From positions 186,001 through 250,000 of IMG/VR virus record IMGVR_UViG_3300042564_002819: a DNA stretch of 64,000 bases. One strand, given 5' to 3'. A program made the position numbers and the translations under genes. Shown piece by piece: positions 1,878-17,381 of this stretch. The notes beneath the pieces were generated by a model. The model was given only the letters and a program-made list of their open reading frames with translations. It was not told where the DNA came from and made no database searches. Every line of letters starts with the position of its first letter. Position 1 is the first letter of the stretch.

Positions 1878-2456
1878 TTGATTAACGCAGAATTGGGTCA
1901 TGTAAAAAATTTAATAGAGTTCAATGAAGACATTCGTAAACAGCACGAAGAAGCTCACGGAGAAGATTATTGCCAAATCTTTGATGCTATTACCAAATAC
2001 ATGAAAGAATGCAAAACTTATATGGAACTCGGTACTCACCACGGCGGCACGGCATCTGCGGCAATGCTTACTAAACCAGATCGAGTTCTATTAGTTGATA
2101 TAGACATGTCAAGATATAATAAATTCTTAGCATCAATTGCACAAGAATGGTGCAATCAAAACAACATCGAATTGATTGTAAAAGAAGCAGATTCTACTTC
2201 CGTTGACACAACTAGTATAACTGATATGTTAGTTATTGATTCCTATCATCATCCAAAGCATATGAAAAAAGAATTAAATCTTCACGGTAGCAATGTTCGT
2301 AAGTACATTATTGCCCACGATACAAGTATTGTTAATGGCGAGCCAAATGATTCGCTTTATCAATGTATGAAACAATTTGCCGACGTAAACGGATGGGAAG
2401 TTGTGGAACGCGGCACTACTAATGTCGGTTATACTGTATTAAAGAAAATACAATAA
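1878..2456 (+). CDS. class I SAM-dependent methyltransferase (Methyltransf_24-like)
   Basis: MELGTHHGG motif I, IDSYH, IIAHDT. Confidence 0.7.
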   Translation: MINAELGHVKNLIEFNEDIRKQHEEAHGEDYCQIFDAITKYMKECKTYMELGTHHGGTASAAMLTKPDRVLLVDIDMSRYNKFLASIAQEWCNQNNIELIVKEADSTSVDTTSITDMLVIDSYHHPKHMKKELNLHGSNVRKYIIAHDTSIVNGEPNDSLYQCMKQFADVNGWEVVERGTTNVGYTVLKKIQ

Positions 2457-3194: not shown

Positions 3195-3854
3195 ATGAAA
3201 GCATATATCATTACAATTTTTGATAATCAAGATAGTGTCAAACATGCAAATATCTGCCTACAGTCGATTAAAGATACAAACTCTGATCTTGATGCTCAAC
3301 TATTCTCAGCAATCACGCCGGATACTATGTTTAATGTAACCTGGACGTGGCCTGCACGTAAAAAACAAACGTGTAATAAAACTGGACTTATTTTAACCGC
3401 TTATAAAAATGCAGACATTAACAAAAGAATTGCCTGTGCTCAAAGTCATTATATGCTTTGGAAAAAATGTGTAGAATTAAACGAAACTATTTGTATTTTA
3501 GAGCATGATGCTTTTTTTATAAAAAAATTTAATTTAACAGATTTTTCTGGCGGTGCAATGTCAATAAACTCGCCGTTAGATGCTACATTTAAAGATCGAG
3601 AGTATGACTCTTTGTTAGAAAATAAAGAAAACGAAGTCCCGTGGGTCACTGAAATAAATATACCGCAAGGACTTCCTGGCAATAGTGCTTATATAATTAA
3701 ACCTTGGGCTGCTAAAAAAGCAATAGAATTACAAGACACCGTTGGATGGTGGCCAAATGATGCTATACTTTGTAAACAGTTATGTTCGTGGTTAACAGTT
3801 TATAAACCTTACTTTACTATATTACAGAATATCAAATCAACAACAGTGAATTAA
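3195..3854 (+). CDS. glycosyltransferase family 25
   Basis: AC..SH..LW.KC, ILEHDA, AYII.P.AA motifs. Confidence 0.8.
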   Translation: MKAYIITIFDNQDSVKHANICLQSIKDTNSDLDAQLFSAITPDTMFNVTWTWPARKKQTCNKTGLILTAYKNADINKRIACAQSHYMLWKKCVELNETICILEHDAFFIKKFNLTDFSGGAMSINSPLDATFKDREYDSLLENKENEVPWVTEINIPQGLPGNSAYIIKPWAAKKAIELQDTVGWWPNDAILCKQLCSWLTVYKPYFTILQNIKSTTVN

Positions 3855-4517
3855 ATGATAGATTTAAAAAAATATAAAGCAGATAGATCTGCAATGAATA
3901 TTACTGCGGAAGACGCATTGTGGGCCAGTAACATTCTTAATGATGATTTTATAAAAAATTGGATTGAACGTAATCCGGAAAATTATTTTGCAAGAGAAAA
4001 ATATTACCCACCTTTTGAAAAGAAAACCAATGAAAAGGTTGCAGTAATTAATTTTTTAAAATTAAAAAACTCTAGTCCAAAAACTGTGCTAGATATTAGT
4101 ACAGGTGCTGGACAGTTTATTAAACTATGTAAAGAATTAGGACACGATGTCGAAGGTACTGAAACACAGCAAAAGTTAGATACTACTGCTACAGAAATAC
4201 ACACCCACTATGGTGTAAACGTTTTTGAACTTACAATACAACACGGTAAAGAAATAAAGTTTGAAAAAAGCTACGACTATATTACATCTTTAAGAACACA
4301 ATTTAACGATCTTGGAGTTTTATGGACTAGTAATGATTGGAAAAACTTTAAAGAAAACATGTTTGATTATTTAAACCCTAACGGAACACTTTTTTTAAAA
4401 ACTAATTTAAAAATTCAAAAGCACGATGTTGGAAGAAAGCAGCAAGAAATGATAAACGCTTTCGGCCCACCTCTTCTTGGCTGGAATAGTTTTACATATT
4501 GTCTCAAAAAAGTATAA
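3855..4517 (+). CDS. SAM-dependent methyltransferase
   Basis: VLDISTGAG motif I; YD.I; LNPNG. Confidence 0.7.
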   Translation: MIDLKKYKADRSAMNITAEDALWASNILNDDFIKNWIERNPENYFAREKYYPPFEKKTNEKVAVINFLKLKNSSPKTVLDISTGAGQFIKLCKELGHDVEGTETQQKLDTTATEIHTHYGVNVFELTIQHGKEIKFEKSYDYITSLRTQFNDLGVLWTSNDWKNFKENMFDYLNPNGTLFLKTNLKIQKHDVGRKQQEMINAFGPPLLGWNSFTYCLKKV

Positions 4518-4533
4518 CCAGAAAAAAGCGGGT

Positions 4534-4541
4534 TATAAATA
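4534..4541 (+). promoter_or_regulatory. T4-type late promoter TATAAATA
   Basis: Exact T4 late consensus 5 nt upstream of ATG 4547. Confidence 0.6.
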
Positions 4542-4546
4542 GTTGC

Positions 4547-5314
4547 ATGGATAAACGAATTGTACTTATTACTGGCGGGTTCGACCCATTACACAGCGGA
4601 CACATTGCATATTTTAAAGCAGCAAAGTCTTTAGGAAATTATTTAATTGTCGGCGTTAACAGTGATGCATGGTTAACTAGAAAAAAAGGTAAACCTTTTA
4701 TGCCATGGACAGAACGAGCTGAGATTATAAAAGAGCTTGGTATGGTCGATGAAGTTATTGATTTTGATGACAACGATAACAGTGCAAATTTTGCAATATA
4801 TAAATGTTTACAAAAATATCCTAATCACAAAATTATTTTTGCAAATGGAGGGGATCGTGTTCCTGAAAACTGTCCAGAATACATTTATAAAAATACTCCG
4901 TGGGTAGAATTTGCTTTTGGTGTCGGTGGCGAAGACAAGAAAAATTCATCTAGTTGGATTTTAGAAGAATGGAAAAATCCAAAAACTTTAAGAGACTGGG
5001 GTTGGTATAGAGTACTTGACGACAAACCTGGATACAAAGTAAAAGAACTTGTTATCGAACCTGGAAAAAGTCTAAGTGATCAAAGACACTTTTTAAGATT
5101 AGAACATTGGTATGTTCTAAAAGGATCCTGTACTCTTAAAACAGAATATAAAAATATTACGCAAAAAATAGAATTAAATGAACTAACTTCCGGATATGTA
5201 ATAGGAAAAGAGGTATGGCATAAAGTTACTAATAATACAGAAAACTTTTGTCATATTTTAGAAGTACAATACGGCGAAAAATGTGTGGAGAATGATATTG
5301 AACGAAGAAATTAA
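4547..5314 (+). CDS. cytidylyltransferase-family domain fused to mannose-6-phosphate isomerase type II cupin
   Basis: TGGFDPLHSGH (HIGH-like), ANGGDR, KNSSS; C-terminal RDWG.Y, SLS.QRH..R.EHW cupin. Confidence 0.85.
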   Translation: MDKRIVLITGGFDPLHSGHIAYFKAAKSLGNYLIVGVNSDAWLTRKKGKPFMPWTERAEIIKELGMVDEVIDFDDNDNSANFAIYKCLQKYPNHKIIFANGGDRVPENCPEYIYKNTPWVEFAFGVGGEDKKNSSSWILEEWKNPKTLRDWGWYRVLDDKPGYKVKELVIEPGKSLSDQRHFLRLEHWYVLKGSCTLKTEYKNITQKIELNELTSGYVIGKEVWHKVTNNTENFCHILEVQYGEKCVENDIERRN

Positions 5315-6104
5315 ACCGTTAAAAATTTTTATAGGTTGGGATAGCAGAGAAGATATTGCATACCAAGTTGCTAGACAAAGCATCTTAGACCATGCAACTG
5401 TTCCTGTAGAAATTGTTCCTCTAAAACAAAAGCAACTTAAAAAAGAAGATTTATACTGGCGGGCAGTTGATAAACTAGCTGCAACAGAATTTACATATAC
5501 TCGATATCTAATTCCGGAACTTACTAATTTCGAAGGTTGGGCTCTCTTTATTGATTGTGACTTTTTATTTTTAGAAGATGTTGCTAAGTTATTTGAACTA
5601 GTAGATGACAAGTATGCAATAATGTGTGCTCAGCACGATTATAATCCTCCTACTGGTGTAAAGATGGATGGTAAATTGCAGACTCAATATCCTAGAAAGA
5701 ATTGGTCTAGCATGATGTTAATAAACTGCGGCCATCCAAAAAACAAAGTTTTAACAAAAGATCTTGTTAACAATCCTGCAAAAACTGGTGCTTATTTTCA
5801 TAGATTTTCTTGGCTAGATGACACTGATATTGGTTCTGTAAGTTACGAGTGGAACTGGCTTGTAAATTGGTATCAAGAACCCACTGACGGCAAACCAAAA
5901 GTATTACATTATACAGAAGGCGGCCCGTGGTTTGAAGAATATCAAGATTGCGAATACGCAGCAGAGTGGTGCAAAGTTGCTAATAGATGCTATGCATCTA
6001 TTGTTGATAACTTAACAAAAGAAATAAAGACAATCAGTAACCGACACATTGACATAGATGATATAACTTATACAAATCAAAAAAAAAATTATTTAAACAC
6101 ATAA
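5292..6104 (+). CDS. glycosyltransferase (GT-A), possibly frameshift-fused to next ORF
   Basis: IFIGWDSRE, TEFTYTR, FIDCDF, YPRKNWSS, HYTEGGPW; ends just after an A10 run. Confidence 0.8.
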   Translation: MILNEEIKPLKIFIGWDSREDIAYQVARQSILDHATVPVEIVPLKQKQLKKEDLYWRAVDKLAATEFTYTRYLIPELTNFEGWALFIDCDFLFLEDVAKLFELVDDKYAIMCAQHDYNPPTGVKMDGKLQTQYPRKNWSSMMLINCGHPKNKVLTKDLVNNPAKTGAYFHRFSWLDDTDIGSVSYEWNWLVNWYQEPTDGKPKVLHYTEGGPWFEEYQDCEYAAEWCKVANRCYASIVDNLTKEIKTISNRHIDIDDITYTNQKKNYLNT

Positions 6105-6181
6105 TACACTCTATAATAGATCCTAATGAAAAATATTATCCTTTATCGAAGGAAGAAGCACTAAAGTTATGGAATAACGAA

Positions 6182-6997
6182 ATGGGAAATAAAATTGCAG
6201 CAATCGACAGCGAAGGTGGCGTAAATTATAAATCAAAAGGCCATTTGTATGACCCGTATCTTACTAACTTTATTATAGGATCTGGTGGATATATTAGCAG
6301 TTGGTCAGAAGAAGAAAACACTGATACTTCGTTAGTTATACGAGGCCTCGGCGGCGGTAGCAGAAAAGCTATAAAACATTGCTGGAAAACAGGCCGAACA
6401 TTTTACGCTATCGACACTGGATATTTAGGAAATGTAAAGACTAAAATTTGGAATAGAGTTAGTAAAAATTCATTACAAAATTTAGGTCCTATCGTTAATA
6501 GACCAACTGATCGACTTAAACTGTTGAACTATAAATTTAATCAATTTACCCCGGGTAGAAAAATATTAATATGTCCACCTAGTGATAAAGTAATGGATCT
6601 TTGGGATCAACCATCCCCGCAACAATGGACAGAAAATGTTATAAAAGAATTAAAACAATACACAGACCGACCTATTGAAGTTCGACTTAAGCCGGATAGA
6701 ACCGAGCGTGTTAATAATAATTCTATTCAATCTGCATTAAGCGACGATGTTTACTGCTTGGTTACATATAATAGTATAGCAGCAACCGAGGCATTGTTAT
6801 TTGGAAAACCTGCAATTGCACTAGGACAAAACGCTGCACAAGTTTTGTGTAACAAAGAATTAAAAGACATAGAAAATCTAAAAATTCCAAAAAAGGATGA
6901 GATGTTAGCATTTGCTGCTCATTTAAGTTATTGTCAATTTAATCAGGCCGAATTTGCTAACGGTACAGCATGGCGTATAGTAAATGAGAGTCGTTAG
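6182..6997 (+). CDS. KpsS/KpsC-like capsule polysaccharide glycosyltransferase
   Basis: VRLKP, VTYNS.AA.EAL..GKP GT-B-type C-terminal motif. Confidence 0.55.
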   Translation: MGNKIAAIDSEGGVNYKSKGHLYDPYLTNFIIGSGGYISSWSEEENTDTSLVIRGLGGGSRKAIKHCWKTGRTFYAIDTGYLGNVKTKIWNRVSKNSLQNLGPIVNRPTDRLKLLNYKFNQFTPGRKILICPPSDKVMDLWDQPSPQQWTENVIKELKQYTDRPIEVRLKPDRTERVNNNSIQSALSDDVYCLVTYNSIAATEALLFGKPAIALGQNAAQVLCNKELKDIENLKIPKKDEMLAFAAHLSYCQFNQAEFANGTAWRIVNESR

Positions 6998-7919
6998 TTA
7001 TATTAATGTTGTACCTTTAAAAAATAAATCACAAGAGAAGTCTGATCTTTTAACAAAGTTTATTAAAGGTGTAAATGCATCAGGAGATACAGGAATTATA
7101 CATACTGGATATAATCTTGTAGATTCGGATGTTGCAATAATTCAAGGTTGGCAACACGAGAGGGGCAAAAATGCCCCTCATCTACAATTAAGACAACAGA
7201 TTATTGATACTCAAATATCTAAGAAAAAATTTGTATGTACTGCTGACAGTAATCTATTTCTTTACGCAAACAAGTCTAACGAACCTTATCATTATTTAAG
7301 ATACAGTTTAAACGGTGTTTTTCCTAATACAGGAATATATTTTGACAAAAATACTGATCCGTCGAGGTGGGATCAAATACAACGTGATACAAGTATAGCC
7401 CTACAATCTCAAAAAACAACAGGAAAAAATATTGTGCTGTTTTGTCAAAGAAACGGCGGATGGAGCATGGGATCTGAAAATGTAACCGATTGGGTTAAAA
7501 GCACTGTTTTTAAAATTAGAAAATATTCCGATAGACCCATTGTTGTTCGACCACATCCTGGAGACAAACAAGCTGCTGAATACTTTAATCCAAAAAAGAC
7601 TAGTTTAAGACATCTAAATAATGTAACTATTAGTAACTTTGATACTCCATTAGAAATAGATTTAAAGGATGCATGGTGTGTGGTTAACCATAACAGCAGT
7701 AGTATAGTTGGTCCTATAATAAAAGGATATCCAGCATTTATAACAGATCCTATCAAAAGTCAGTGTGCCGAAGTTACACACCATTCGTTTGAGTTTATAG
7801 AGAATCCTAAAGAGTTTGATAGACTATCGTGGTTACAAAGAATTTCCATGTTTCATTGGAAATTTAGCGAACTAGAAGATGGCAGTGCGTGGAAGCATAT
7901 ACGAAATTACTGCCAATAA
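6984..7919 (+). CDS. KpsS/KpsC-like glycosyltransferase
   Basis: FCQ, VRPHP, VV.HNSS...GYP motifs. Confidence 0.55.
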   Translation: MRVVSYINVVPLKNKSQEKSDLLTKFIKGVNASGDTGIIHTGYNLVDSDVAIIQGWQHERGKNAPHLQLRQQIIDTQISKKKFVCTADSNLFLYANKSNEPYHYLRYSLNGVFPNTGIYFDKNTDPSRWDQIQRDTSIALQSQKTTGKNIVLFCQRNGGWSMGSENVTDWVKSTVFKIRKYSDRPIVVRPHPGDKQAAEYFNPKKTSLRHLNNVTISNFDTPLEIDLKDAWCVVNHNSSSIVGPIIKGYPAFITDPIKSQCAEVTHHSFEFIENPKEFDRLSWLQRISMFHWKFSELEDGSAWKHIRNYCQ

Positions 7920-8743
7920 CTATTTTTATGTTGTGTGATTATATCTGTTTTTTTAGATTTTCCAAGTGACTTTCTGTCACCCTTCATATGATCCATCCAC
8001 TTACCTAGTTTACTGTTAATCAACGGATGGCCGCCACCACCTGATTTTGCACCAATCAATTTTAGTTCGGCTGTATAATCGATAACATTAGGATGTCTAA
8101 TTTTTAAAGAATTAAGAATCTTTCCAAATACAAATGAGTCATGCCATTCATCTAATTTAAAAATTCCATTTTCTGCATCTTCGTACATGCGTTCAAACTC
8201 TTGTAAAAATTCTTTACATGTTACATCGTGCAAGTTAAGTCCGTAGAAACCACATTCGGGCCATGACTGAGATTCCGAACCTCTTCCTACATAAGTAATC
8301 CAACTGGTTTTTGGCAATATTTCTAACCAATCATCATAATTCCAAGTTGAATGTATGAAGCTATCTGCATCCATCCACACAACCCAGTCGTCACCTTTTG
8401 TACATGCATCAAAAACTGCATATACTTTATTTGCAAATCTCACAGCATCCCATTTAAATTCTTTATGAAAATCTCTAGGACGACGTTCTGGCCACGGACA
8501 CTTACCATTTGCTTTTGGAACATTTTTCCACTTTTCTTTAAATTTAGATAATTTAGGAAGAACTTCTTTGGCGTTTAGTATAGTAATTTGATTTGTGTCT
8601 GGATTAATAGGAAAGCAGTCTTCTGCATACACAACTAATTTTATTTTTTTATCAACATTTTTTGAAAATGAATCAATGAATCGTTGACCATATAAATCCA
8701 TCCCGGGTTTATGAAAAGTTGTAATCACAGTTATGTTAGTCAT
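7907..8743 (-). CDS. GT-A glycosyltransferase
   Basis: RF..KVYA, WMDADS DxD, ECGF, WHDS, H.KG.RK. Confidence 0.7.
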   Translation of the reverse strand: MTNITVITTFHKPGMDLYGQRFIDSFSKNVDKKIKLVVYAEDCFPINPDTNQITILNAKEVLPKLSKFKEKWKNVPKANGKCPWPERRPRDFHKEFKWDAVRFANKVYAVFDACTKGDDWVVWMDADSFIHSTWNYDDWLEILPKTSWITYVGRGSESQSWPECGFYGLNLHDVTCKEFLQEFERMYEDAENGIFKLDEWHDSFVFGKILNSLKIRHPNVIDYTAELKLIGAKSGGGGHPLINSKLGKWMDHMKGDRKSLGKSKKTDIITQHKNSYWQ

Positions 8744-8779
8744 GAGTTGTCCTTATTAAATAGCTATAGGTATTTACAA

Positions 8780-9637
8780 ATGAAATTTAAACTATGGAGA
8801 GAATACGGTGCATTGAATTCAAAGCCAGTCTTTGATGCATTTGCCAAGGGGCTTGAAAATTTAGGCTACAAATCTGTAAATGATAACTCAGCCGATGTTG
8901 ATGTAATATGGAGTGTATTATTTCAGGGTCGCATGTTACTAAACAAAACTGTTTGGGATAATGCAAAACGAGCAGGAAGACCGGTAATTGTTTTAGAAGT
9001 AGGCGGAATATCAAGAGGAACAACGTGGAAAATTGGTCTAAACGGTATCAACAAAGGTTCGTACTTTAAACCCGAATCTGCTGACAATAGCAGAGCTGCA
9101 CAACTAGGACTAACCCTACAACCGTGGAGAATCAACGGAGAGTTCATCATTATCTGTGGTCAACATAACAAAAGTTTACAATGGCATAACATGCCGGCAA
9201 TGAGTAAGTGGGTTATGGATACCATAGACACTATTCAACAATTTTCAAAACGTACTATAATTATTAGACCACACCCTAGATGCCCGTTGCCGCATATTGA
9301 AAATCAATTTAAAAATGTTTACAATCAAACACCTATTCATATAAGCGGAACTTACGATAGCTTTAATCTAAACTTTTCGAACACGTGGGCAACTGTAAGT
9401 TGGAATTCAAATCCTGGATCTCAAAGTATAATTGCAGGTGTCCCTGCATTTGTAAGTGAAAGCAGTTTAGCTAGTCCGGTAGCAAATATAGATTTGTCAA
9501 ATATCGAAAATCCTTCAATGCCAGACAGACAACAGTGGCTTAACGAACTAGCATACACAGAATATACTATAAAAGAAATAGAAAACGGAATGCCTATAAA
9601 AAACTTGACACATATGATGCAACATGTTAAGTTTTAA
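8780..9637 (+). CDS. KpsS/KpsC-like glycosyltransferase
   Basis: ICGQ, IRPHPR, VSWNS.PG..S..AGVP; paralog of 6984..7919. Confidence 0.55.
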   Translation: MKFKLWREYGALNSKPVFDAFAKGLENLGYKSVNDNSADVDVIWSVLFQGRMLLNKTVWDNAKRAGRPVIVLEVGGISRGTTWKIGLNGINKGSYFKPESADNSRAAQLGLTLQPWRINGEFIIICGQHNKSLQWHNMPAMSKWVMDTIDTIQQFSKRTIIIRPHPRCPLPHIENQFKNVYNQTPIHISGTYDSFNLNFSNTWATVSWNSNPGSQSIIAGVPAFVSESSLASPVANIDLSNIENPSMPDRQQWLNELAYTEYTIKEIENGMPIKNLTHMMQHVKF

Positions 9638-9639
9638 AA

Positions 9640-10815
9640 ATGACCCAAACCATAGAAGATATTCTTAGCATAGTAGTGTCTGTTAGCGATGCAGTTCTGC
9701 CAACAGACAAAGGAATTCTGGCCAGCATTGACAGGCAAATCAAACGTGGATCTGCACTAACTGATCGTCAATACGAATTGGTTAGGACAAAACTACTAAC
9801 GTACAGAGATTTTTTGACTTCTGTTGGTGTCGCAGATCTAAACGAAACACTGGATAATCTAAAGTATCCTCTGCGGTCGGTGGATAGATCTAAGTCTGTT
9901 GTTATCAATAACAACCTAATCGAAGTCAGATTTCCTTTTAATAAAAAAACAATTTTGTTGCTAACCGAAGTAATCAAAAAATGTAAGCGGTTTTATCAAC
10001 ACGAAAAAGGAACAACTGTACACAAATTTAAAATTAACGAGACAACAGTTGACGAGATTGTAAGTGTGTTTATGTCGAAGAACTTTTACATAGATCCTAC
10101 AATTCTTGAAATCTACAAAAAAATCAACGAGGCCAAAATGGATAAAGAATCAATTCTTCCAGGAATCTATAATAACGAACTAAAGAATTTTAAAAAGTCG
10201 GCCCTTGACTTAATGAACCAAGAACTTGGACCTTTGACCAGCGAAAACTTAATTAAATTTTACGATCGCAGACGTCGTTACGGAATCTGCGAAATCGAGT
10301 GTTCTGCACACAGAAACACGTTAACCGAAACTATTGCATTCCGCGAAGAAACTGAAATTGCAGTTAATCCGGAAATTTATTCACTAGATTCTATAGTAGA
10401 CGCAGTGCTTAAACTTGAAAGATTTCCACTGTTGGTATTGGTTGATCCTGAAAATCCATTGCACGATGTTTCTAAAATCTATAACGCATTCAATGGAGTA
10501 GTTCCTAACGAAAAACAAACAGTATTGTTTAGAGTAGACAATACTGAAACTTATAACTTGAATAACTTTATTCATGACAACAAATTAAACAATTGGCTTG
10601 ACACAAGCACAGAAATTGTTTATATTAATAAGAATAAGCTTCCAAAATTGTTAGTTCGTGACAGTTGGAAACCTATGACCACGTTAGCATTATCAAGCTA
10701 TCGTTCTAATTCCCACGTTTCTCTGTATGTTAAGGACGTGTGTGATCTTATCATTTATCATGATAAGAGTATGAGTATTATCGGTAACAAACAAAAGTAT
10801 GGCAACTACTACTAA
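9640..10815 (+). CDS. hypothetical protein upstream of UvsW helicase
   Basis: 391-aa ORF coupled to helicase; no recognised motif. Confidence 0.6.
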   Translation: MTQTIEDILSIVVSVSDAVLPTDKGILASIDRQIKRGSALTDRQYELVRTKLLTYRDFLTSVGVADLNETLDNLKYPLRSVDRSKSVVINNNLIEVRFPFNKKTILLLTEVIKKCKRFYQHEKGTTVHKFKINETTVDEIVSVFMSKNFYIDPTILEIYKKINEAKMDKESILPGIYNNELKNFKKSALDLMNQELGPLTSENLIKFYDRRRRYGICEIECSAHRNTLTETIAFREETEIAVNPEIYSLDSIVDAVLKLERFPLLVLVDPENPLHDVSKIYNAFNGVVPNEKQTVLFRVDNTETYNLNNFIHDNKLNNWLDTSTEIVYINKNKLPKLLVRDSWKPMTTLALSSYRSNSHVSLYVKDVCDLIIYHDKSMSIIGNKQKYGNYY

Positions 10816-12262
10816 ACTAATAATCGAAGACGAAGTAAATATAAAATTCGAAGGCCTAAGTGTAGACGTAAGACGTAAACTTTCAAACGCATTAAAGTTT
10901 GATGTTCCGTATGCTCGCCATATGCCCCATTACAAACTAGGGCGTTGGGACGGTAAGGTTGGATTTTTTGGTATCGGCGGGTCTGGCTATCTAAATCATT
11001 TAGATGTTTTATTACCAATACTTGAACAAAGTAACGTCACTATCTCTGAGATTGAAGATAGAAGGCATCCAGTTAGTTTAAAGTTTGAACCGATTGCAGA
11101 AGACTTTTGGGGAGACATAAGCTGGCCCAAAGGACATCGCTTTGCGGGCGAACCGATCAGACTGCGTGATGACCAAGTAGAAGTTATTAATCGCTTCTTA
11201 GAAAATCCCCAAGCACTTCAGGAAGTTTCTACAGGTGCAGGTAAAACCATCACAACTGCTACACTGAGTAAACTGTGCGAACCGTACGGACGCACACTTG
11301 TGATTGTACCCAACAAAAGTCTTGTAGAACAAACACTTGACGACTACGTCAATTGTCAGTTGGACGTTGGCGTTTACTACGGCGACAGAAAAGATTTTGG
11401 CAAAATGCATACTATCTGTACTTGGCAAAGTCTTAACATTCTTGAAAAAAGATTCAAAGATCATGAAAGCACCTTCGGACTCGACGAGTTTTTAGAAGGT
11501 GTATCTGCGGTAATTGTTGATGAAGTGCATCAGGCAAAAGCAGAAGTACTAAAAACAATATTAACAAGAAATTTAAGTCATTGCCCCATACGTTGGGGTT
11601 TGACTGGAACAGTACCAAAAGAAGCATTTGAATTCCAAAGTATTTTAGCAAGTTTGGGTCCTGTAGTAGGATCAGTGACTGCTAAAGAATTACAAGACAA
11701 AGGAATTTTATCTTCATGTCATGTTAATATATGTCAGTTAATCGATATAAAAGAATTTAGAGATTATCAAGCTGAATTAAAATATCTTGTAACAGACGAA
11801 CAACGATTAAATTACATTAGCAAACTTTTATTAAAAATCAAAGATTCAGGCAACACACTTATTTTAGTAGATAGAATTACAGCAGGCGAACAACTACAAA
11901 AACTTATCCCGGGTTCCGTTTTTATTAACGGTTCAGTTAAAACTAAGGATCGTAAGGAAACATATGATGAAGTACAAGAAGCTGACGACATGGTTATTAT
12001 CGCTACCTACGGTGTGGCGGCTGTTGGTATTAATATACCTCGCATATTTAATCTTGTGCTTTTTGAGCCTGGTAAGTCTTTTGTACGTGTTATTCAAAGT
12101 ATAGGTCGCGGCGTTAGAAAAGCAAAAGACAAAGACTTTGTACAAATATGGGATATTACAAGCACTTGCAAGTACGCAAAAAAACATTTAACCGAGCGTA
12201 AAAAGTTTTACAAGGATGCACAATATCCATTTACAATAGAAAAAATAGACTGGAAAAAATAA
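10799..12262 (+). CDS. uvsW: UvsW-like SF2 DNA helicase
   Basis: TGAGKT, DEVH, GLTGT, QSIGRGVR; N-terminal WDGK typical of T4-like UvsW. Confidence 0.85.
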   Translation: MATTTKLIIEDEVNIKFEGLSVDVRRKLSNALKFDVPYARHMPHYKLGRWDGKVGFFGIGGSGYLNHLDVLLPILEQSNVTISEIEDRRHPVSLKFEPIAEDFWGDISWPKGHRFAGEPIRLRDDQVEVINRFLENPQALQEVSTGAGKTITTATLSKLCEPYGRTLVIVPNKSLVEQTLDDYVNCQLDVGVYYGDRKDFGKMHTICTWQSLNILEKRFKDHESTFGLDEFLEGVSAVIVDEVHQAKAEVLKTILTRNLSHCPIRWGLTGTVPKEAFEFQSILASLGPVVGSVTAKELQDKGILSSCHVNICQLIDIKEFRDYQAELKYLVTDEQRLNYISKLLLKIKDSGNTLILVDRITAGEQLQKLIPGSVFINGSVKTKDRKETYDEVQEADDMVIIATYGVAAVGINIPRIFNLVLFEPGKSFVRVIQSIGRGVRKAKDKDFVQIWDITSTCKYAKKHLTERKKFYKDAQYPFTIEKIDWKK

Positions 12263-12266
12263 TAAC

Positions 12267-12773
12267 ATGAGGATTTTAACCCTTGAAAATAAAACATTTG
12301 AACTAAATCACTTACCCGATACCGTAGAAGAAACTGTTAGATTTGCAGTTTTGGATAACAGCAATCCTGCAGATCCGGATTTCTTTTTTAATCCGCTGAT
12401 TTTTTTAGAAAGTTTTAACAGTCCTGCAATTGTACTTGAAATTGGAGGTCACGAAATCACCATGCCGTTGGACTGGTGTATTGCAGTAGGATGCAGCGAT
12501 GCAGGAAGTGACTTAGAAATACTTCCTCTTACTAGCTTAAACGACAGAGGTTTTGAAGCATTTTTATTCAATCCTCTAACTGGATCTTACCCACAATTTG
12601 GCAAGATCGAAATACTAAATTTTTACAATGACGTAAAGTGGTATTTTCCAAAAATGCGTAATGGACAATTGTTAAGTGTTCCTATAACAGATACTAAAAA
12701 CCCCCAGTGTGCATTTTTTGTAAAAGACATTAGTCGTCAAAGTGAAATTATTGACTTTGGAAAATTATTATAA
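12267..12773 (+). CDS. hypothetical protein
   Basis: 168-aa ORF in operon. Confidence 0.6.
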   Translation: MRILTLENKTFELNHLPDTVEETVRFAVLDNSNPADPDFFFNPLIFLESFNSPAIVLEIGGHEITMPLDWCIAVGCSDAGSDLEILPLTSLNDRGFEAFLFNPLTGSYPQFGKIEILNFYNDVKWYFPKMRNGQLLSVPITDTKNPQCAFFVKDISRQSEIIDFGKLL

Positions 12774-12800
12774 ATTAAGGCATAACGAAAGGTTTTAAAA

Positions 12801-13583
12801 ATGCTCATTCAAACTAACAAGGCCCCGTCTCTATTTATTACCAAAAAAAATACATTAAAAGGTAAAGTGTCCTACAGCGAATATGTAGAAAAGACAGAAT
12901 ATAATTCTGAAGTATTAAAAAGAATAGTTAAAAATAATGAACCTCTAAACTTATTGTTAACACAAGTTTATACTTACGACAACAACCCTGGAGACATCCA
13001 TTGGTCACTGTTGCAGCCAAAATGGGCCGACATTATACCAGCAACGTTCTTAGGTCATTTAGCTATTACAAATGATAACAACGGAGCCGACGGTATGCGT
13101 TATTGTAATAATAATAATTCGTTTGCTGAAACTGAATATAAGATTTGTACAGTTAGAAGTAGTAACATAAATGTAGGTCCAAAGGGTGGCTTGAATATTC
13201 CGTCAAGTAATAAAAGTACATACCCAACAGGTATTAGTAGTGCAATTTCGGCGGCATATTGCATTCACTCAAACGAAAATCTCGATACTAAAAACAGAGA
13301 AACTTATCTTTGCTTAACAGATGTTAATAACAAAGATTTTCATTTTATCGACTTTTGGAGATTGTCAGGCGAAGTGGCTCTTGCATCTTTACAAGAATCG
13401 GACAAAAAGCAGAGAATGATTTCTCTTGCAAAGTTTATAAATTACGGCGAAACTATCGAAGCAGTTGTTCCTACATATTCTTGGCAATTGTTTGAACTAG
13501 ATCAAAAAAGAAAAAAGCATCCTGATACAAAAGAACGAAAAAAATATGAAAAATTATACAAAGCTCTTAAGGATGCAAAATGA
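12801..13583 (+). CDS. hypothetical protein
   Basis: 260-aa ORF with AAGG upstream. Confidence 0.55.
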   Translation: MLIQTNKAPSLFITKKNTLKGKVSYSEYVEKTEYNSEVLKRIVKNNEPLNLLLTQVYTYDNNPGDIHWSLLQPKWADIIPATFLGHLAITNDNNGADGMRYCNNNNSFAETEYKICTVRSSNINVGPKGGLNIPSSNKSTYPTGISSAISAAYCIHSNENLDTKNRETYLCLTDVNNKDFHFIDFWRLSGEVALASLQESDKKQRMISLAKFINYGETIEAVVPTYSWQLFELDQKRKKHPDTKERKKYEKLYKALKDAK

Positions 13584-13699
13584 GTATCAGAGCAGGTTGG
13601 ATAGATATCATTAACGAACGTAAAGCATTGGTAAATGATATTATTAATTGGGCTCCTACAGCTGGTGTAAAAATTAAATCTATTAAAGTATATGTATAA
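13580..13699 (+). CDS. small hypothetical protein (39 aa)
   Basis: ATGA overlap with previous stop; fills gap before cupin gene; below ORF-track cutoff. Confidence 0.4.
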   Translation: MSIRAGWIDIINERKALVNDIINWAPTAGVKIKSIKVYV

Positions 13700-13708
13700 G
13701 GAGAACAC

Positions 13709-14068
13709 ATGGGAATACGTGCAGGAAAAATTTGGGGTAATACCGAACTAATACACGCCAATGGTGTATTAGAGTTTCACCGTATAGAATTTAAAGCAGG
13801 TTACAAATGTTCAGAACACGAACACAAATTTAAGTGGAATGGCTTCTTTGTTGAAAGTGGCAAGATGCTAATACGTGTTTGGCAAGACGGCGATCAAAAC
13901 GGTCTAGTTGATGAAACAATACTGGAAGCAGGACAATTTACTCAAGTAAAACCTGGCAAAATACATCAATTCGAAGGTCTTGAAGATGGCGTTGCTTTTG
14001 AACTTTATTGGGCAGAATTTAACCACGACGACATCGTAAGAAGAACAATAGGTAAAAAAATTGGGTAA
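13709..14068 (+). CDS. cupin-fold protein (sugar isomerase-like)
   Basis: K.WG, CSEH.H..K, F.V.SG, PG..HQF; SD AGGAG. Confidence 0.7.
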   Translation: MGIRAGKIWGNTELIHANGVLEFHRIEFKAGYKCSEHEHKFKWNGFFVESGKMLIRVWQDGDQNGLVDETILEAGQFTQVKPGKIHQFEGLEDGVAFELYWAEFNHDDIVRRTIGKKIG

Positions 14069-14297
14069 TCTAATTCCGGGTGAAAAATTAATTTACGAAC
14101 GTGTAGGTAAAGTTATCTATGCAAGATATTTTAATAGACCGGAAATACCCAGGTGGCCTATTGGCGGACAAGACATTGAAGAATACAGCGTTAAAGACTT
14201 GTCTAACATTGTTGAGTTAAGTAAAACAAATTTGACTCTTAAAAAAGAACTAGACAAACTAATGAATCTATATTATATTGTAAAGGATCACAAATGA
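14061..14297 (+). CDS. hypothetical protein
   Basis: Coupled ORF. Confidence 0.5.
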   Translation: MGNLIPGEKLIYERVGKVIYARYFNRPEIPRWPIGGQDIEEYSVKDLSNIVELSKTNLTLKKELDKLMNLYYIVKDHK

Positions 14298-15076
14298 AAA
14301 TAATTGCAGGCCCGTGTCAACATGAAACTTTAGCACAGAGTGCAGAAATTGCACGTGAATGCAAGCGTGTTTGTGAAAAATACGGCGTTGAATACTATTT
14401 TAAAGCTAGCTATGATAAGGCAAACAGAACTAGTATAAACGGACAACGCGGCGTAGGGCTCGAAGCTACAATGTACGATTTCAGAAGCCTTAAAGAAACT
14501 CTAGGCGTAAATACGTTAACAGATGTGCATGATATAAATCAACTAGTTTATATCAATACAGCTTGGGGTGATTATATAGATGTTTATCAAATCCCTGCTT
14601 TTCTTTGTCGCCAAACAGATCTTATCAGAGCTGCTGTGGAGACAGGCAAAACGGTCAACATTAAAAAAGGACAGTTTCTTGCGCCGTGGGATGTCTCGGG
14701 CATTCTATCGAAAACCCGAGGCGCCAAAGAAGTCTGGATAACTGAAAGAGGAACAAGTTTTGGCTATAACACCCTTGTTGTTGACTACACTGGTATGCAG
14801 TATATTATGGATAATTATGATGTTCCGTTTGTGTTCGATGCGACACATTCTGTTCAAAAGCCCGGCGGACAAGGAAACTCTAGTGGTGGTAACCGTAGTT
14901 ATGTTGCTGGCCTTTGCCGTGCTGCTAGTGCAATGGGTGTTGATAATTTCTTCTTAGAAGTTCACCCAGATCCAGACAATGCACCAAGCGACGGGCCTAA
15001 TATGTTACGTCTCGAAGACTTTGAACAAGTCGTAAAAGACATTTATGAATTTAATTATAACAGGAGAATACAATGA
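14294..15076 (+). CDS. kdsA: KDO8P synthase (3-deoxy-8-phosphooctulonate synthase)
   Basis: IAGPC, KASYDKANRTS, QIPAFLCRQTDL, KKGQFLAP, ERG.SFGY, DATHSVQ, A.SDG. Confidence 0.95.
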   Translation: MKIIAGPCQHETLAQSAEIARECKRVCEKYGVEYYFKASYDKANRTSINGQRGVGLEATMYDFRSLKETLGVNTLTDVHDINQLVYINTAWGDYIDVYQIPAFLCRQTDLIRAAVETGKTVNIKKGQFLAPWDVSGILSKTRGAKEVWITERGTSFGYNTLVVDYTGMQYIMDNYDVPFVFDATHSVQKPGGQGNSSGGNRSYVAGLCRAASAMGVDNFFLEVHPDPDNAPSDGPNMLRLEDFEQVVKDIYEFNYNRRIQ

Positions 15077-15585
15077 AGAAAATTACACTCATTGCAATGC
15101 TATTTGGTACCGCAGCATTTGCACAAACAACAACAACTACACCAGTTAATCCACAGATTACCGACGCAGTAACACAAGCACAACACGACGAACTTACTGC
15201 TAGAGTTTTAGAACTAGAATCAATAATGGACGAACTTTTTAGAAAAGATCAACTAGAACACACTAGAGCATTTTTTGCGTTTGATAGCTTTGTTGCAAAT
15301 GAACAAAGTAAACCAGTAGTAAACGAACTTGTTTCTTTTATGAAAGATTATCCTGCATACTTTCTCACTATCGAAGGACATGCCGACGAACGTGGCACAA
15401 GAGTATATAACTTGTCCATCGGCGAAAGACGTGCTAGTTGGATCAAACAAGAACTTGTAAAAAACGGAATTGATTCAAACAGAATTCAAACTGTTAGCTA
15501 CGGTAAGGAACGTCCAGCGGTAGTAGGATCAAATGAAGTTGCATGGTCACAAAACCGTCGCACTGTTTTTGTTTTGATCAAATGA
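15073..15585 (+). CDS. Pal/OmpA-family peptidoglycan-binding protein with signal peptide (no lipobox)
   Basis: IEGHADERGT..YNL..GERRA, VSYGKERP, QNRR; N-terminal AFA signal. Confidence 0.85.
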   Translation: MKKITLIAMLFGTAAFAQTTTTTPVNPQITDAVTQAQHDELTARVLELESIMDELFRKDQLEHTRAFFAFDSFVANEQSKPVVNELVSFMKDYPAYFLTIEGHADERGTRVYNLSIGERRASWIKQELVKNGIDSNRIQTVSYGKERPAVVGSNEVAWSQNRRTVFVLIK

Positions 15586-16256
15586 CTACTGCAATTTTAA
15601 TACCTGCTAGATTGTCTAGCACTAGATTTCCAAAAAAAATGCTAGCCAATCTCAACGGGCGTCCGTTAATACAACGTGTGTTTGAATCATGTTGGAACTC
15701 CGGATACGACACTTATGTTCTTACAGATAGTCAAGAAATTGCTGATATTCTTCCAACAAATCGAGTAATAATGACTAGAGAAGATCACGAGAACGGAACC
15801 AGCAGATGCATGGAAGTTATCGACGAAGTATTACAATATGACAGATATATTAACGTACAAGGCGACATGCCAGACGTTACTGCTGAAATGTTAATGAAAA
15901 TTGACATAGAATTAAAAACATATTCAGACGTTGCTACAGCATATTCTACTATGGACTTTAATGATCGTCAAAATCCAAATGTGGTCAAGATGATTCATAA
16001 CAGAGGCAGAGCTCATTGGTTTTTAAGAGCACCTCTGTCATATGGAGATAGACATTTAGGAATTTACGGTTATAATAGAATAGCAAAGTCATATTACACT
16101 GCAAGTAAGAAATATGTCGAAGAAGATATTGAAAAACTTGAACAACTTAGATGGATACAAAACGGTATTAAAATTGGTGTTGTTGAAGTTGAATTTAACG
16201 GCGTTGAAATCAATACTCCAGAGGATTTGGAATTATGGGAAAAAATAAAGAAGTAG
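15582..16256 (+). CDS. kdsB: CMP-Kdo synthetase (3-deoxy-manno-octulosonate cytidylyltransferase)
   Basis: IPARL.STRFP.K, NVQGD.P, H.GIYGY, E.LEQLR, INTPEDL. Confidence 0.9.
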   Translation: MTTAILIPARLSSTRFPKKMLANLNGRPLIQRVFESCWNSGYDTYVLTDSQEIADILPTNRVIMTREDHENGTSRCMEVIDEVLQYDRYINVQGDMPDVTAEMLMKIDIELKTYSDVATAYSTMDFNDRQNPNVVKMIHNRGRAHWFLRAPLSYGDRHLGIYGYNRIAKSYYTASKKYVEEDIEKLEQLRWIQNGIKIGVVEVEFNGVEINTPEDLELWEKIKK

Positions 16257-16705
16257 ACTTGTTCGAAGACATGATTCCTGCAATTGATCTCAATATAAAA
16301 GAGTTGTGGGATGCATCGAACGAAGCAGGTCAAAAAGAAATCAAAGGCGACATGTGGACTCTTAATCGCTACATCAGCAGCGTAAAAGGAAACAGAGAAA
16401 AGCAAGAGCTTGCTGTTTTTAAAACCAATGAGTATTATAATAAAAATTGGAATTCCATAGGACTGCGTCACCCAAAATTACAGTGGCAACTTTTGTGTAT
16501 TTCTGGAAATACAGGGAAAAAAGAATTCCATCCGTGGATAGGATTAAAACAAGCCAAAGGTGTAAACACTAAGGCTGTTAAATTTTTAGAAGAAATATAT
16601 CCAACTAAAAAAATAGACGAGATTGAATTAATTGCTAGAATATTTACAAAAACAGAACTTGAACAACTCGCTAGAGATCATGGCTACGAAAAAATTAGCT
16701 TTTGA
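16235..16705 (+). CDS. clamp loader small subunit (T4 gp62-like)
   Basis: LNRY.S, HP.LQW, K.FH.WI pattern; replication context. Confidence 0.5.
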   Translation: MGKNKEVDLFEDMIPAIDLNIKELWDASNEAGQKEIKGDMWTLNRYISSVKGNREKQELAVFKTNEYYNKNWNSIGLRHPKLQWQLLCISGNTGKKEFHPWIGLKQAKGVNTKAVKFLEEIYPTKKIDEIELIARIFTKTELEQLARDHGYEKISF

Positions 16706-17381
16706 TAAGCCTTTTGTATGCGAGTACTGTGGTACTGGATATGCAAAAGAAAAAACTCTTATGGTTCATATGTGTGAACAAAAAAGAAGGCACTTACAAA
16801 AGTCTGAGAAAAGAGTTCAACTTGGATATCAGACCTTTGTAAGATTTTATCAAAAATCGGCCGGACACAAGAATATAAAAACCTATGAAGAATTTTGCAA
16901 AAGTCCTTTCTACAATGCGTTTGTAAAATTTGGTTCATTTTTAAATAATGTAAAACCATTATACACCGAAAAGTATATTGACTACATTGTAACAAGCGGT
17001 GTTAAAATTGACCATTGGTGTAATGAAACACTTTATGAAAAATATGCTGTAGATTTAATAATGAAAGAAAATGTTGAAACAGCATTGGAAAGATCTGTTA
17101 ACACTATGATAGAATGGGGCGTAGCTCACAATGCACCTTGGAATCATTATTTCAATTATGTTTCTTTAAACAAAGCTACGTTTGATATCAAAGACGGAAA
17201 GATATCGCCGTGGCTTATATTAAATTGCAAGTCCGGCAAAGAAATGTTGTCTAAATTCAATGACGAACAGTTAAATATGATATATCATATAATGAACCCT
17301 GAACATTGGGCGTTGAGATTTAAACGCCAAAGTCGGGATGTTGAACTTGTAAAAAAAGTTGCTAAAGAAGGTAATTTGTAA
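16680..17381 (+). CDS. zinc-finger protein (C-x2-C...H-x-C)
   Basis: FVCEYCG.GY.KE.TL..HMCE. Confidence 0.6.
   Translation: MATKKLAFDKPFVCEYCGTGYAKEKTLMVHMCEQKRRHLQKSEKRVQLGYQTFVRFYQKSAGHKNIKTYEEFCKSPFYNAFVKFGSFLNNVKPLYTEKYIDYIVTSGVKIDHWCNETLYEKYAVDLIMKENVETALERSVNTMIEWGVAHNAPWNHYFNYVSLNKATFDIKDGKISPWLILNCKSGKEMLSKFNDEQLNMIYHIMNPEHWALRFKRQSRDVELVKKVAKEGNL

What the first reader, a model, noticed from the sequence alone, without database searches (positions are those of the whole stretch)
6182..16256. Phage-encoded CMP-Kdo supply plus three KpsS/KpsC-like transferases
kdsA and kdsB lie among replication genes. Three paralogs with HP and NS motifs resemble the CMP-Kdo-using beta-Kdo transferases of capsule assembly. 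With about six GT-A enzymes, three methyltransferases, a cytidylyltransferase-cupin fusion and a cupin, this suggests a complete pathway for a methylated, Kdo-containing glycan on virion proteins, DNA or the host surface. No kdsC or kdsD was seen in the window.
Basis: partly seen in the sequence, partly recalled or inferred. Interest (0 to 1): 0.6.

Follow-up and report, generated by a model that had tools for sequence, protein, structure and literature searches.

The report
Phage Kdo genes plus KpsC-like transferases
A freshwater jumbo phage carries two genes for making activated Kdo sugar and three diverged copies of a capsule-type Kdo-transferase fold that have lost the usual catalytic aspartate, which points to a phage-built acidic glycan made by a so far uncharacterised enzyme branch.

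Summary
kdsA (14294-15076) and kdsB (15543-16256) are real and sit among replication genes. Three mutually similar genes, P1 (6182-6997), P2 (6984-7919) and P3 (8780-9637), have no Pfam, PHROG or PDB sequence hit. A confident model of P3 is closest to the retaining Kdo transferases KpsC, WbbB and KrkA. A profile-profile alignment links the three families to KpsC/KpsS (91.5% probability).

The interpretation needs three corrections.

1. The invariant Asp nucleophile of the QXXXD motif is missing in all three families. The CMP-binding Arg and Ser and the N-domain acid are kept. P1 also has Lys in place of the HP histidine. These are therefore not canonical retaining beta-Kdo transferases.
2. P1-P3 belong to a clade-wide core module with a cytidylyltransferase-cupin fusion, a GT8-like gene and a GT6-like gene. 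kdsA and kdsB are accessory: both present in 30 of 45 related loci, both absent in 12.
3. The pathway is not complete. The 330-kb record has no kdsC, kdsD, waaA or neuB.

The acceptor is unknown. The known routes to a glycosylatable base in DNA were not detected. My best reading is cytidine-nucleotide-dependent, probably CMP-Kdo-using, transferases with a changed mechanism.

The parts
1878..2456 (+). Accessory sugar O-methyltransferase (CmcI/rhamnosyl O-methyltransferase-like). It is found in few relatives.
   Evidence: Pfam RMNT_CmcI at 1.9e-07. It is present in only 2 of 83 related loci.
3195..3854 (+). Accessory GT25-family glycosyltransferase (LPS/LOS galactosyltransferase type).
   Evidence: Pfam Glyco_transf_25 at 1.7e-14. 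Its presence varies among relatives.
3855..4517 (+). Accessory class I SAM methyltransferase.
   Evidence: Pfam Methyltransf_23 at 4.2e-08.
4499..5314 (+). Core gene: fusion of a cytidylyltransferase-like domain (HxGH class) with a mannose-6-P-isomerase-type cupin. It probably makes a nucleotide-activated phospho-sugar or phospho-alcohol.
   Evidence: Pfam CTP_transf_like at 1.2e-14 plus MannoseP_isomer at 2.9e-19. PDB hits are ethanolamine-P, glycerol-3-P and choline-P cytidylyltransferases. It is found in nearly all related loci that reach far enough upstream.
5283..6104 (+). Core gene: GT8-like GT-A glycosyltransferase.
   Evidence: Pfam Glyco_transf_8 at 1.3e-04, 22.1 bits, just below the 24.3-bit cut-off. 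PHROG 28018 at 2.7e-48. It is conserved in related loci and has a homolog beside the P homologs in Caulobacter phage CcrBL9 (32% identity, 6.5e-35).
6182..6997 (+). P1: KpsC/KpsS-like GT-B paralog with R-x-K-P in place of R-x-H-P.
   Evidence: BLASTP to P2 gives 3e-10 and to P3 6e-12. Column counts: R168 in 69/69, Lys170 in 65/69, D78 in 68/69, S198 in 69/69.
6984..7919 (+). P2: KpsC/KpsS-like GT-B paralog with R-x-H-P and N-S-S. Gly sits at the nucleophile position.
   Evidence: BLASTP to P3 gives 5e-19. Column counts: Q155, R189, H191, P192 and S238 in 73/73; G159 in 71/73.
7907..8743 (-). Core gene: GT-A glycosyltransferase with a D-A-D motif. Its fold is nearest the GT6 retaining alpha-1,3-Gal/GalNAc transferases.
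   Evidence: AF2 pLDDT 91.0. Foldseek top hits are ABO GTA/GTB and alpha3GalT at 2e-08. D125 and D127 are invariant.
8780..9637 (+). P3: KpsC/KpsS-like GT-B paralog with R-P-H-P, N/S-S and Q-H-x-K-S.
   Evidence: AF2 pLDDT 92.8. Nearest folds are KpsC, WbbB and KrkA. hhalign to KpsC/KpsS gives 91.5%.
13709..14068 (+). Small cupin of unknown role. It is present in 37 of 45 related loci, with or without kdsA/kdsB.
   Evidence: Pfam Cupin_2 at 3e-06. PHROG 7851. Counts.
14294..15076 (+). KdsA, Kdo-8-phosphate synthase. The AGPC motif suggests the metal-dependent class.
   Evidence: NCBIfam NF003543 at 335 bits (cut-off 242) and TIGR01362 at 319 bits (cut-off 314). Sequence.
15073..15585 (+). Secreted OmpA/Pal-like peptidoglycan-binding protein between kdsA and kdsB. 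It has a signal peptide but no lipobox Cys. It is rare among relatives.
   Evidence: Pfam OmpA at 7.2e-17. TIGR02802 Pal at 1.1e-33, below the cut-off. Sequence. Present in 3 of 45 related loci.
15543..16256 (+). KdsB, CMP-Kdo synthetase. The likely start is Met14, at 15582.
   Evidence: Pfam CTP_transf_3 at 1.5e-29. All 13 PDB hits are KdsB. The NCBIfam kdsB models are the best hits but fall below their cut-offs.

Best explanation
The window lies in a roughly 330-kb uncultured freshwater jumbo phage.

The phage carries a conserved six-gene glycan-assembly module: a cytidylyltransferase-cupin fusion, a GT8-like gene, P1, P2, a GT6-like gene and P3. P1, P2 and P3 are old, diverged paralogs of the KpsC/KpsS-type GT-B fold. 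They keep the cytidine-nucleotide binding residues: the Arg of (K/R)XHP, the His in P2 and P3, and the phosphate-binding Ser. They also keep the N-domain acid that is the general base in KpsC.

About 5 kb downstream, in a variable slot, this phage and about two thirds of its relatives add kdsA and kdsB. These would raise the CMP-Kdo supply using host arabinose-5-P and a host Kdo-8-P phosphatase.

The inferred mechanism is that P1-P3 each transfer Kdo from CMP-Kdo to successive positions of a glycan started or extended by the GT-A enzymes. Because the Asp nucleophile of QXXXD is gone, they probably act by direct displacement, as inverting sialyltransferases do, which would give alpha-Kdo. They would not use the covalent double-displacement route of KpsC, WbbB and KrkA.

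Shown here: gene identities, fold, homology, motif conservation and synteny. Inferred: the donor, the stereochemistry and the order of steps. Unknown: the acceptor, which could be a host LPS or capsule glycolipid or a virion protein.
For: Fold:
- The P3 model has pLDDT 92.8.
- The Foldseek hits listed through rank 25 are all Kdo transferases.
- VIA Z-scores are 13.6 for KpsC, 12.4 for WbbB and 10.8 for KrkA, against at most 10.2 for other GT-B folds.
- The same order comes out of an independent search of 48,161 chains.

Homology:
- hhalign of the P superfamily against a KpsC-N/KpsC-C/KpsS profile gives 91.5% probability and E 8.8e-07 over 190 columns. The reversed control gives 0.0%.
- A viral Atlas cluster next to P3 carries Capsule_synth in 18% of its members.

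Residues aligned to KpsC:
- E73 aligns with E66, R163 with K192, H165 with H194, and S210 with S239.
- All of these are 95-100% conserved within each family.

CMP-sugar supply:
- KdsA and KdsB are the only CMP-sugar route in the record. No NeuB was found.
- kdsA and kdsB are gained and lost together: both in 30 loci, neither in 12, one alone in 3.
- In one sister lineage a kdsB-like gene overlaps the stop of a P paralog.
- P homologs occur in phages that have no CTP_transf_3-type CMP-sugar synthetase of their own (CcrBL9, podovirus MW202713). These must use a host cytidine-linked donor. From general knowledge, CMP-Kdo is the universal one in Gram-negative hosts.
Against: - No Pfam Capsule_synth hit for P1-P3, even at E<=10.
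- No PDB sequence hit.
- The Asp nucleophile that defines known Kdo transferases of this fold is absent.
- P1 lacks the catalytic His.
- kdsA and kdsB are missing from 12 of 45 relatives that keep P1-P3, and from five such contigs searched whole, though those contigs are only 7-31% complete.
- In this clade the constant partner of P1-P3 is the cytidylyltransferase-cupin fusion, which could make a different cytidine-linked donor.
- The kdsB adjacency in the sister clade is one lineage only.
- No biochemical data exist.
Confidence: 0.5

Rival explanations
1. P1-P3 use a CDP-activated (or other nucleotide-activated) substrate made by the core cytidylyltransferase-cupin fusion. An example would be a phospho-alcohol or phospho-sugar transferred in a teichoic-acid-like manner. 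On this reading kdsA and kdsB are an unrelated auxiliary module.
For: - In this clade the fusion sits two genes upstream of P1 in nearly all related loci that reach far enough.
- Its N-domain is nearest to CDP-alcohol-forming cytidylyltransferases.
- The Arg of (K/R)XHP reads cytosine, not the sugar (PMC12887879).
- Loss of the Kdo-specific nucleophile, and of the carboxylate-binding Gln in P1, fits a different donor.
Against: - No TagF-like or other phosphotransferase fold appears among the listed top 50 hits of any of the three PDB searches. Kdo transferases stand clearly above every other GT-B fold.
- The fusion is absent from the sister-clade loci and from the podovirus that still carry P homologs.
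- Gln128 in P3 and Gln155 in P2 are invariant. The aligned Gln binds the Kdo carboxylate in known enzymes.
Confidence: 0.25
2. kdsA and kdsB are ordinary auxiliary metabolic genes. They sustain or alter host LPS synthesis during infection, independently of P1-P3. The three paralogs act on another substrate or are partly non-catalytic.
For: - Phage kdsA/kdsB have been reported before and read this way, in Synechococcus phage S-SCSM2R (PMC12801897) and in a marine viral genome (PMC5332604).
- S-SCSM2R and the 462-kb phage LR756500 have kdsA and kdsB but gave no P homolog in tblastn.
- kdsA and kdsB lie in a variable slot.
Against: - There is no waaA or any other known Kdo-using enzyme in the phage.
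- The only candidate CMP-sugar users in the record are P1-P3.
- Each paralog family keeps its own invariant active-site residues, which argues against pseudo-enzymes.
Confidence: 0.15
3. The module glycosylates phage DNA, building a Kdo- or heptose-type hypermodification on cytosine or uracil derivatives.
For: - The module lies between recombination and replication genes, with a UvsX-like gene upstream in relatives and UvsW downstream.
- A phage GT that puts a Kdo-mass sugar on 5hmC has been reported, as has a cytidylyltransferase-plus-GT-B heptose route (bioRxiv 10.1101/2023.12.21.572611).
Against: - The 93%-complete record has no thymidylate-synthase homolog, no Tet/JBP dioxygenase and no C5 DNA methyltransferase. 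The known ways to make 5hmC, 5hmU or 5hoC are therefore missing.
- The reported DNA glycosyltransferases resemble T4 beta-GT, not KpsC.
Confidence: 0.05

Closest known systems
KpsC and KpsS (CAZy GT107; Pfam Capsule_synth PF05159), the retaining beta-Kdo transferases that build the poly-Kdo linker of group 2 capsules
   Same: - Nearest solved fold: Z 13.0-13.6 with 224-236 aligned residues.
- Profile-profile homology at 91.5%.
- The aligned general-base acid, the (K/R)XHP motif and the T/N-S phosphate-binding Ser are kept.
- The Gln of QXXXD is kept in P2 and P3.
- Several modules or paralogs work side by side.
   Different: - No Pfam hit.
- The Asp160-equivalent is Ser in P3, Gly in P2 and Val or Pro in P1.
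- P1 has Lys in place of His194.
- The proteins are shorter (271-311 aa).
- By eye, P1-P3 contain no long hydrophobic stretch; no membrane-segment prediction was run.
- They are encoded by lytic-type jumbo phages, not capsule loci.
WbbB N-terminal domain (GT99) and KrkA (GT140), retaining Kdo transferases of O-antigen capping and K13 capsule
   Same: - Second and third nearest folds, at Z 11.8-12.4 and 10.8.
- The same CMP-binding motifs described for these families (PMC12887879, PMC9587256).
   Different: The covalent Asp nucleophile (D232 in WbbB, D193 in KrkA) has no conserved counterpart in the phage families.
Inverting bacterial sialyltransferases and polysialyltransferase (GT52, GT80, GT38)
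   Same: - A GT-B fold with an HP motif that binds CMP.
- An N-domain acid as general base and no covalent intermediate. This is the mechanism I infer for P1-P3.
   Different: - They are structurally more distant (Z 8.5-8.9 for polysialyltransferase).
- The phage has no sialic-acid synthesis gene.
Phage-encoded kdsA/kdsB in Synechococcus phage S-SCSM2R, and viral Capsule_synth proteins of Tetraselmis virus 1
   Same: - S-SCSM2R has adjacent KdsA and KdsB (38% and 36% identity).
- TetV-1 has four proteins with the P3 fold, two of them annotated as capsule polysaccharide biosynthesis proteins (E 6e-17 to 8e-12).
   Different: - S-SCSM2R gave no P homolog.
- None of these viral proteins has been studied biochemically, as far as the library searches showed.

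Membership tests
Retaining beta-Kdo glycosyltransferases (GT107 KpsC/KpsS, GT99 WbbB, GT140 KrkA) | Modified GT-B fold shared by these families | tested here: met
   The P3 model is nearest to KpsC (Z 13.6), WbbB (12.4) and KrkA (10.8), clear of other GT-B folds at 10.2 or less. P1 and P2 were not modelled. They are inferred to share the fold from paralogy.
Retaining beta-Kdo glycosyltransferases (GT107 KpsC/KpsS, GT99 WbbB, GT140 KrkA) | QXXXD motif with an absolutely conserved Asp nucleophile | tested here: not met
   The profile alignment puts P3 S132 (65/65), P2 G159 (71/73) and P1 V/P137 at KpsC D160. The only acid-rich column nearby is variable: P3 has D48/E12/N5, P2 has N38/D24/E5, and P1 has E37/D18/L5/N4. 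The window's own P3 has Asn there.
Retaining beta-Kdo glycosyltransferases (GT107 KpsC/KpsS, GT99 WbbB, GT140 KrkA) | (K/R)XHP CMP-binding motif | tested here: met
   Met in P3 (R-P-H-P, 65/65) and P2 (R-x-H-P, 73/73). P1 keeps only the Arg; His is replaced by Lys in 65/69 and Pro is present in 46/69.
Retaining beta-Kdo glycosyltransferases (GT107 KpsC/KpsS, GT99 WbbB, GT140 KrkA) | General-base Glu in the N-terminal domain (KpsC Glu66) | tested here: met
   P3 E73 (65/65), P2 D88 (71/73) and P1 D78 (68/69) align with KpsC E66.
Retaining beta-Kdo glycosyltransferases (GT107 KpsC/KpsS, GT99 WbbB, GT140 KrkA) | Use of CMP-beta-Kdo as donor, with retention of configuration | not testable with these tools
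   This needs enzyme assays and NMR of the product.
Pfam Capsule_synth (PF05159) | Score above the family's gathering threshold | tested here: not met
   No hit for P1-P3 at E<=10 and none in the whole record. Only profile-profile comparison and an Atlas neighbour cluster link them to this family.
KdsA (Kdo-8-phosphate synthase) | Equivalog-level HMM score | tested here: met
   NF003543 at 335 bits against a 242 cut-off, and TIGR01362 at 319 against 314.
KdsB (CMP-Kdo synthetase) | Equivalog-level HMM score and specificity within CTP_transf_3 | tested here: inconclusive
   The best NCBIfam hits are all kdsB models but fall below their cut-offs (181 bits against 193; 128 against 155). All 13 PDB hits are KdsB, and no NeuA or PseF appears at 1e-05. 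It is co-inherited with kdsA.
Complete Kdo pathway (KdsD, KdsA, KdsC, KdsB) | All four enzymes encoded | tested here: not met
   No KdsC (TIGR01670) or KdsD/KpsF (TIGR00393) in the record at E<=1.
Phage DNA sugar hypermodification systems | An enzyme that creates the hydroxyl handle on the base (a thymidylate-synthase homolog, or a C5 methyltransferase with a TET-like dioxygenase) | tested here: not met
   PF00303, PF12851 and PF00145 gave no match in the record.

The most novel reading that the evidence does not exclude
P1-P3 represent a phage-borne glycosyltransferase family that evolved from the retaining KpsC/KpsS scaffold by losing the covalent nucleophile. On this reading they now make alpha-linked Kdo (or another ulosonic acid) by direct displacement, which would be a second, WaaA-independent way to form alpha-Kdo linkages. 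Together with the GT8-like and GT6-like enzymes, they would build a Kdo-rich acidic oligosaccharide on virion proteins or on the host outer-membrane glycolipid. This would hold across a very abundant clade of aquatic jumbo phages.
Probability: 0.3. Interest if true: 0.75.

Novelty: new variant of a known kind. Interest (0 to 1): 0.6.

Why it matters
Retaining Kdo transferases are a recently defined enzyme group (GT99, GT107, GT140). Their hallmark is a covalent Asp-Kdo intermediate. A large natural family on the same scaffold without that Asp would show how the fold switches mechanism. It would also enlarge the set of CMP-ulosonate transferases.

The family is not rare. A word search found 4640 protein clusters, and one pattern scan of IMG/VR found at least 594 contigs. 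The window's own stretch recurs in lake and river metagenomes of more than a dozen studies. A conserved, unannotated glycan-building module in abundant aquatic jumbo phages bears on two questions: how such phages decorate their virions, and how they remodel host surfaces to block superinfection.

It also gives a concrete use for the kdsA/kdsB genes that earlier papers listed only as LPS-related auxiliary genes.

Tried and rejected
- Pfam, PHROG and NCBIfam scans of P1-P3 gave nothing, even at E<=10.
- phmmer and an hmmsearch profile against PDB sequences gave only chance thymidylate kinase hits.
- hhalign of the P3-rich alignment A1 against single KpsC-N or KpsS sequences gave only 3-5% probability, although the short aligned pieces were the right motifs. 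It worked only with a three-family profile against a three-module Kps profile.
- MAFFT of single sequences put a 2-residue gap after the Gln and aligned the variable D/N/E column with KpsC D160. The HMM-HMM alignment is gapless and puts Ser, Gly or Val there instead. Neither column is an invariant Asp.
- The search for related loci with the mixed alignment A2 failed because it had no conserved stretch.
- The genome-contig scan returned only MAG-binned contigs with phage synteny, so no cellular members were found. That method sees close relatives only.
- The record behind L003 is not held, so I could not check whether kdsA/kdsB lie elsewhere in it.
- Five kdsAB-less contigs searched whole had no CTP_transf_3 gene, but they are only 7-31% complete.
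- I looked for kdsB next to a P paralog as a conserved arrangement in the sister clade. It occurs in one lineage only (L103/L104), so it counts as a single event.
- The DNA-glycosylation idea was considered and down-weighted.
- I did not run the large representative-protein search. Fold, profile and synteny evidence had settled the family question, and no claim here rests on the absence of relatives.

Full report
**Context.** The window is bases 186001-250000 of a 330,024-bp IMG/VR virus record that CheckV rates 93% complete. The UvsW-like helicase at 10799-12262 is 52-56% identical to those of the jumbo phages Phosso, Atu_ph07 and PA5oct. Megablast finds no close isolate. The stretch 6182-9637 recurs in lake-water and riverine metagenomes from more than a dozen studies. 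The first 20 kb have 33-38% G+C.

**The Kdo genes.**
- The ORF at 14294-15076 passes two NCBIfam equivalog cut-offs for Kdo-8-phosphate synthase. It has the AGPC motif of the metal-dependent class (the class assignment is from general knowledge).
- The ORF at 15543-16256 is a CTP_transf_3 protein. All its PDB relatives are CMP-Kdo synthetases, although it stays below the curated kdsB cut-offs.
- Between them lies a secreted OmpA/Pal-like protein.
- The whole record has no match to KdsC, KdsD/KpsF, WaaA or NeuB. The phage can therefore only top up a host pathway.

**The three paralogs.** P1 (6182-6997), P2 (6984-7919) and P3 (8780-9637) match one another at 3e-10 to 5e-19. They match no Pfam, PHROG, NCBIfam or PDB sequence.
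- An AlphaFold2 model of P3, built on 35 sequences, has pLDDT 92.8.
- The Foldseek matches listed through rank 25 are all Kdo transferases (WbbB, KpsC, KrkA).
- VIA-align gives Z 13.6, 12.4 and 10.8 for these three, against at most 10.2 for any other GT-B protein.
- A Foldseek-independent scan of 48,161 chains gives the same top four.
- I took E. coli UTI89 KpsC and KpsS from the annotated genome. A profile of the three phage families aligns with a KpsC-N/KpsC-C/KpsS profile at 91.5% probability and E 8.8e-07 over 190 columns. The reversed control gives 0.0%.
- The ESM Atlas places P3 next to a purely viral cluster in which 18% of members carry Capsule_synth.
- BFVD shows the same fold in Tetraselmis virus 1 proteins annotated as capsule biosynthesis proteins, and in Caulobacter phage CcrColossus.

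**Active site.** The literature defines the retaining Kdo transferases by three features: a QXXXD motif whose Asp forms a covalent Kdo adduct, a (K/R)XHP motif and serines that hold CMP, and a general-base Glu (PMC12887879; PMC10148158). I collected 65-73 orthologs of each paralog from 83 related loci and counted columns. What each family has at each KpsC residue:

| KpsC residue and role | P3 | P2 | P1 |
|---|---|---|---|
| E66, general base | E73 (65/65) | D88 (71/73) | D78 (68/69) |
| K192, Arg/Lys of (K/R)XHP | R163, invariant | R189, invariant | R168, invariant |
| H194, His of (K/R)XHP | H165, invariant | H191, invariant | Lys in 65/69 |
| S239, phosphate-binding Ser | S210, invariant | S238, invariant | S198, invariant |
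| Q156, Gln of QXXXD | Q128, invariant | Q155, invariant | Pro |
| D160, Asp nucleophile | Ser (65/65) | Gly (71/73) | Val or Pro |

The only nearby acid-rich column is variable and includes Asn, Leu and Gly. The window's own P3 has Asn there. These proteins are therefore homologs of the Kdo transferases that keep nucleotide binding and the base but have lost the nucleophile. I infer a direct-displacement (inverting) mechanism. This is an inference, not a result.

**Synteny.** P3 has 4640 word-search relatives, on contigs up to 374 kb. One pattern scan of IMG/VR found at least 594 contigs.
- The run cytidylyltransferase-cupin / GT8-like / P1 / P2 / 278-aa gene / P3 / 391-aa gene / UvsW / 168-aa gene is kept, so far as each contig reaches, across the 80 IMG/VR loci and the three long contigs read. 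A few loci lack a detectable 391-aa gene.
- The 278-aa gene is a GT-A enzyme with a D-A-D motif. Its nearest fold is GT6.
- kdsA and kdsB lie in a variable slot. Of the 45 loci that span it, 30 have both, 12 have neither and 3 have one. The Pal-like gene is in 3.
- The methyltransferases and GT25 upstream of 4499 are also variable.
- A sister clade has four P paralogs plus GT61. It lacks the fusion within the flanks read. In one lineage only, a kdsB-like gene overlaps a P paralog.
- Caulobacter phage CcrBL9 has two P homologs and a GT8-like homolog beside its tail genes. A 42.7-kb podovirus has a P homolog and a homolog of the 278-aa gene. Neither phage has a CTP_transf_3 gene, and the podovirus has no CTP_transf_like gene either.
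- Genome-collection hits were all MAG-binned contigs with phage synteny.

**Interpretation.** The fold, the cytosine-reading Arg, the phosphate-binding Ser and the carboxylate-binding Gln in P2 and P3 all point the same way. So does the fact that Kdo is the only CMP-sugar route in the phage. Together they make CMP-Kdo the most likely donor.

Two facts keep a different cytidine-linked donor alive as the main rival. kdsA and kdsB are accessory, and a cytidylyltransferase-cupin fusion is the constant partner in this clade. Its N-domain resembles CDP-alcohol-forming enzymes.

That phages lacking any cytidylyltransferase still carry P homologs argues for a universal host donor, which again favours CMP-Kdo. 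This last step rests on general knowledge of Gram-negative metabolism.

**Acceptor.** This is open. The GT25, GT8 and GT6 types are typical of LOS/LPS outer-core assembly (general knowledge). The Caulobacter homologs sit next to tail genes.

DNA glycosylation with Kdo-mass and heptose sugars has been reported for other phage glycosyltransferases. However, the thymidylate-synthase homolog, TET-like dioxygenase and C5 methyltransferase that those routes need are not in this record.

**Prior knowledge.** Phage kdsA/kdsB have been reported and read as LPS-related auxiliary genes. I found no paper on KpsC/KpsS-like transferases in phages.

Noticed in passing
window 7907-8743 (minus strand) and its orthologs in L003-L086: The GT6-like 278-aa gene between P2 and P3 is on the minus strand in 41 related loci and on the plus strand in 36 (77 loci with a full-length ortholog). 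The module around it is otherwise collinear, so this is a single-gene orientation polymorphism.
   Followed up: partly
window 24000-44000: About 20 kb with 41-52% G+C, against 33-38% in 1-20000. It is packed with short ORFs, many of them on the minus strand, and holds three tRNA genes (Arg-TCT, Met-CAT, Leu-TAA) at 36344-36630 on the minus strand. I did not examine the reason for the composition jump.
   Followed up: partly
window 20250-21734: A NodU/CmcH-type carbamoyltransferase (Carbam_trans_N and Carbam_trans_C, 6e-41 and 3.9e-49) sits between the primase and the DnaB-like helicase. It is also seen in relatives. Its substrate is unknown, and it could modify a sugar or a base.
   Followed up: no
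L088 10087-12863; also L030, L053, L084, L086: In L088 the UvsW helicase gene is split into two halves by an insert of about 1.3 kb. In several other loci the P3-to-UvsW spacing is enlarged by 3-5 kb. This suggests an intron, intein or homing-endonuclease insertion.
   Followed up: no
L087/L089 1653-2444; L093/L103-L117: Some relatives have a fourth P paralog. The sister clade adds a GT61 glycosyltransferase, a 2OG-Fe(II) oxygenase and a faint CST-I (GT42 sialyltransferase) match.
   Followed up: partly
L004/L005 14369-16636; L003 14006-15642: In relatives, the variable slot that holds kdsA/kdsB can also hold an NAD-dependent sugar epimerase/dehydratase, a UDP-glucose/GDP-mannose dehydrogenase-like gene and a Vut_1 (queuosine-precursor transporter family) gene. 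The slot therefore acts as a hot spot for sugar-nucleotide genes.
   Followed up: no
window 12801-13583: This 260-aa ORF in the variable slot has no homolog in any of the 83 related loci and no family hit.
   Followed up: no
L087-L094 (genome contigs): Contigs with full jumbo-phage synteny, including one of 335 kb, are filed in public MAGs labelled Neomarinimicrobiota, Crocinitomicaceae, Verrucomicrobia, Rickettsiales and Pacearchaeota. These are probably binning artefacts rather than host evidence.
   Followed up: partly
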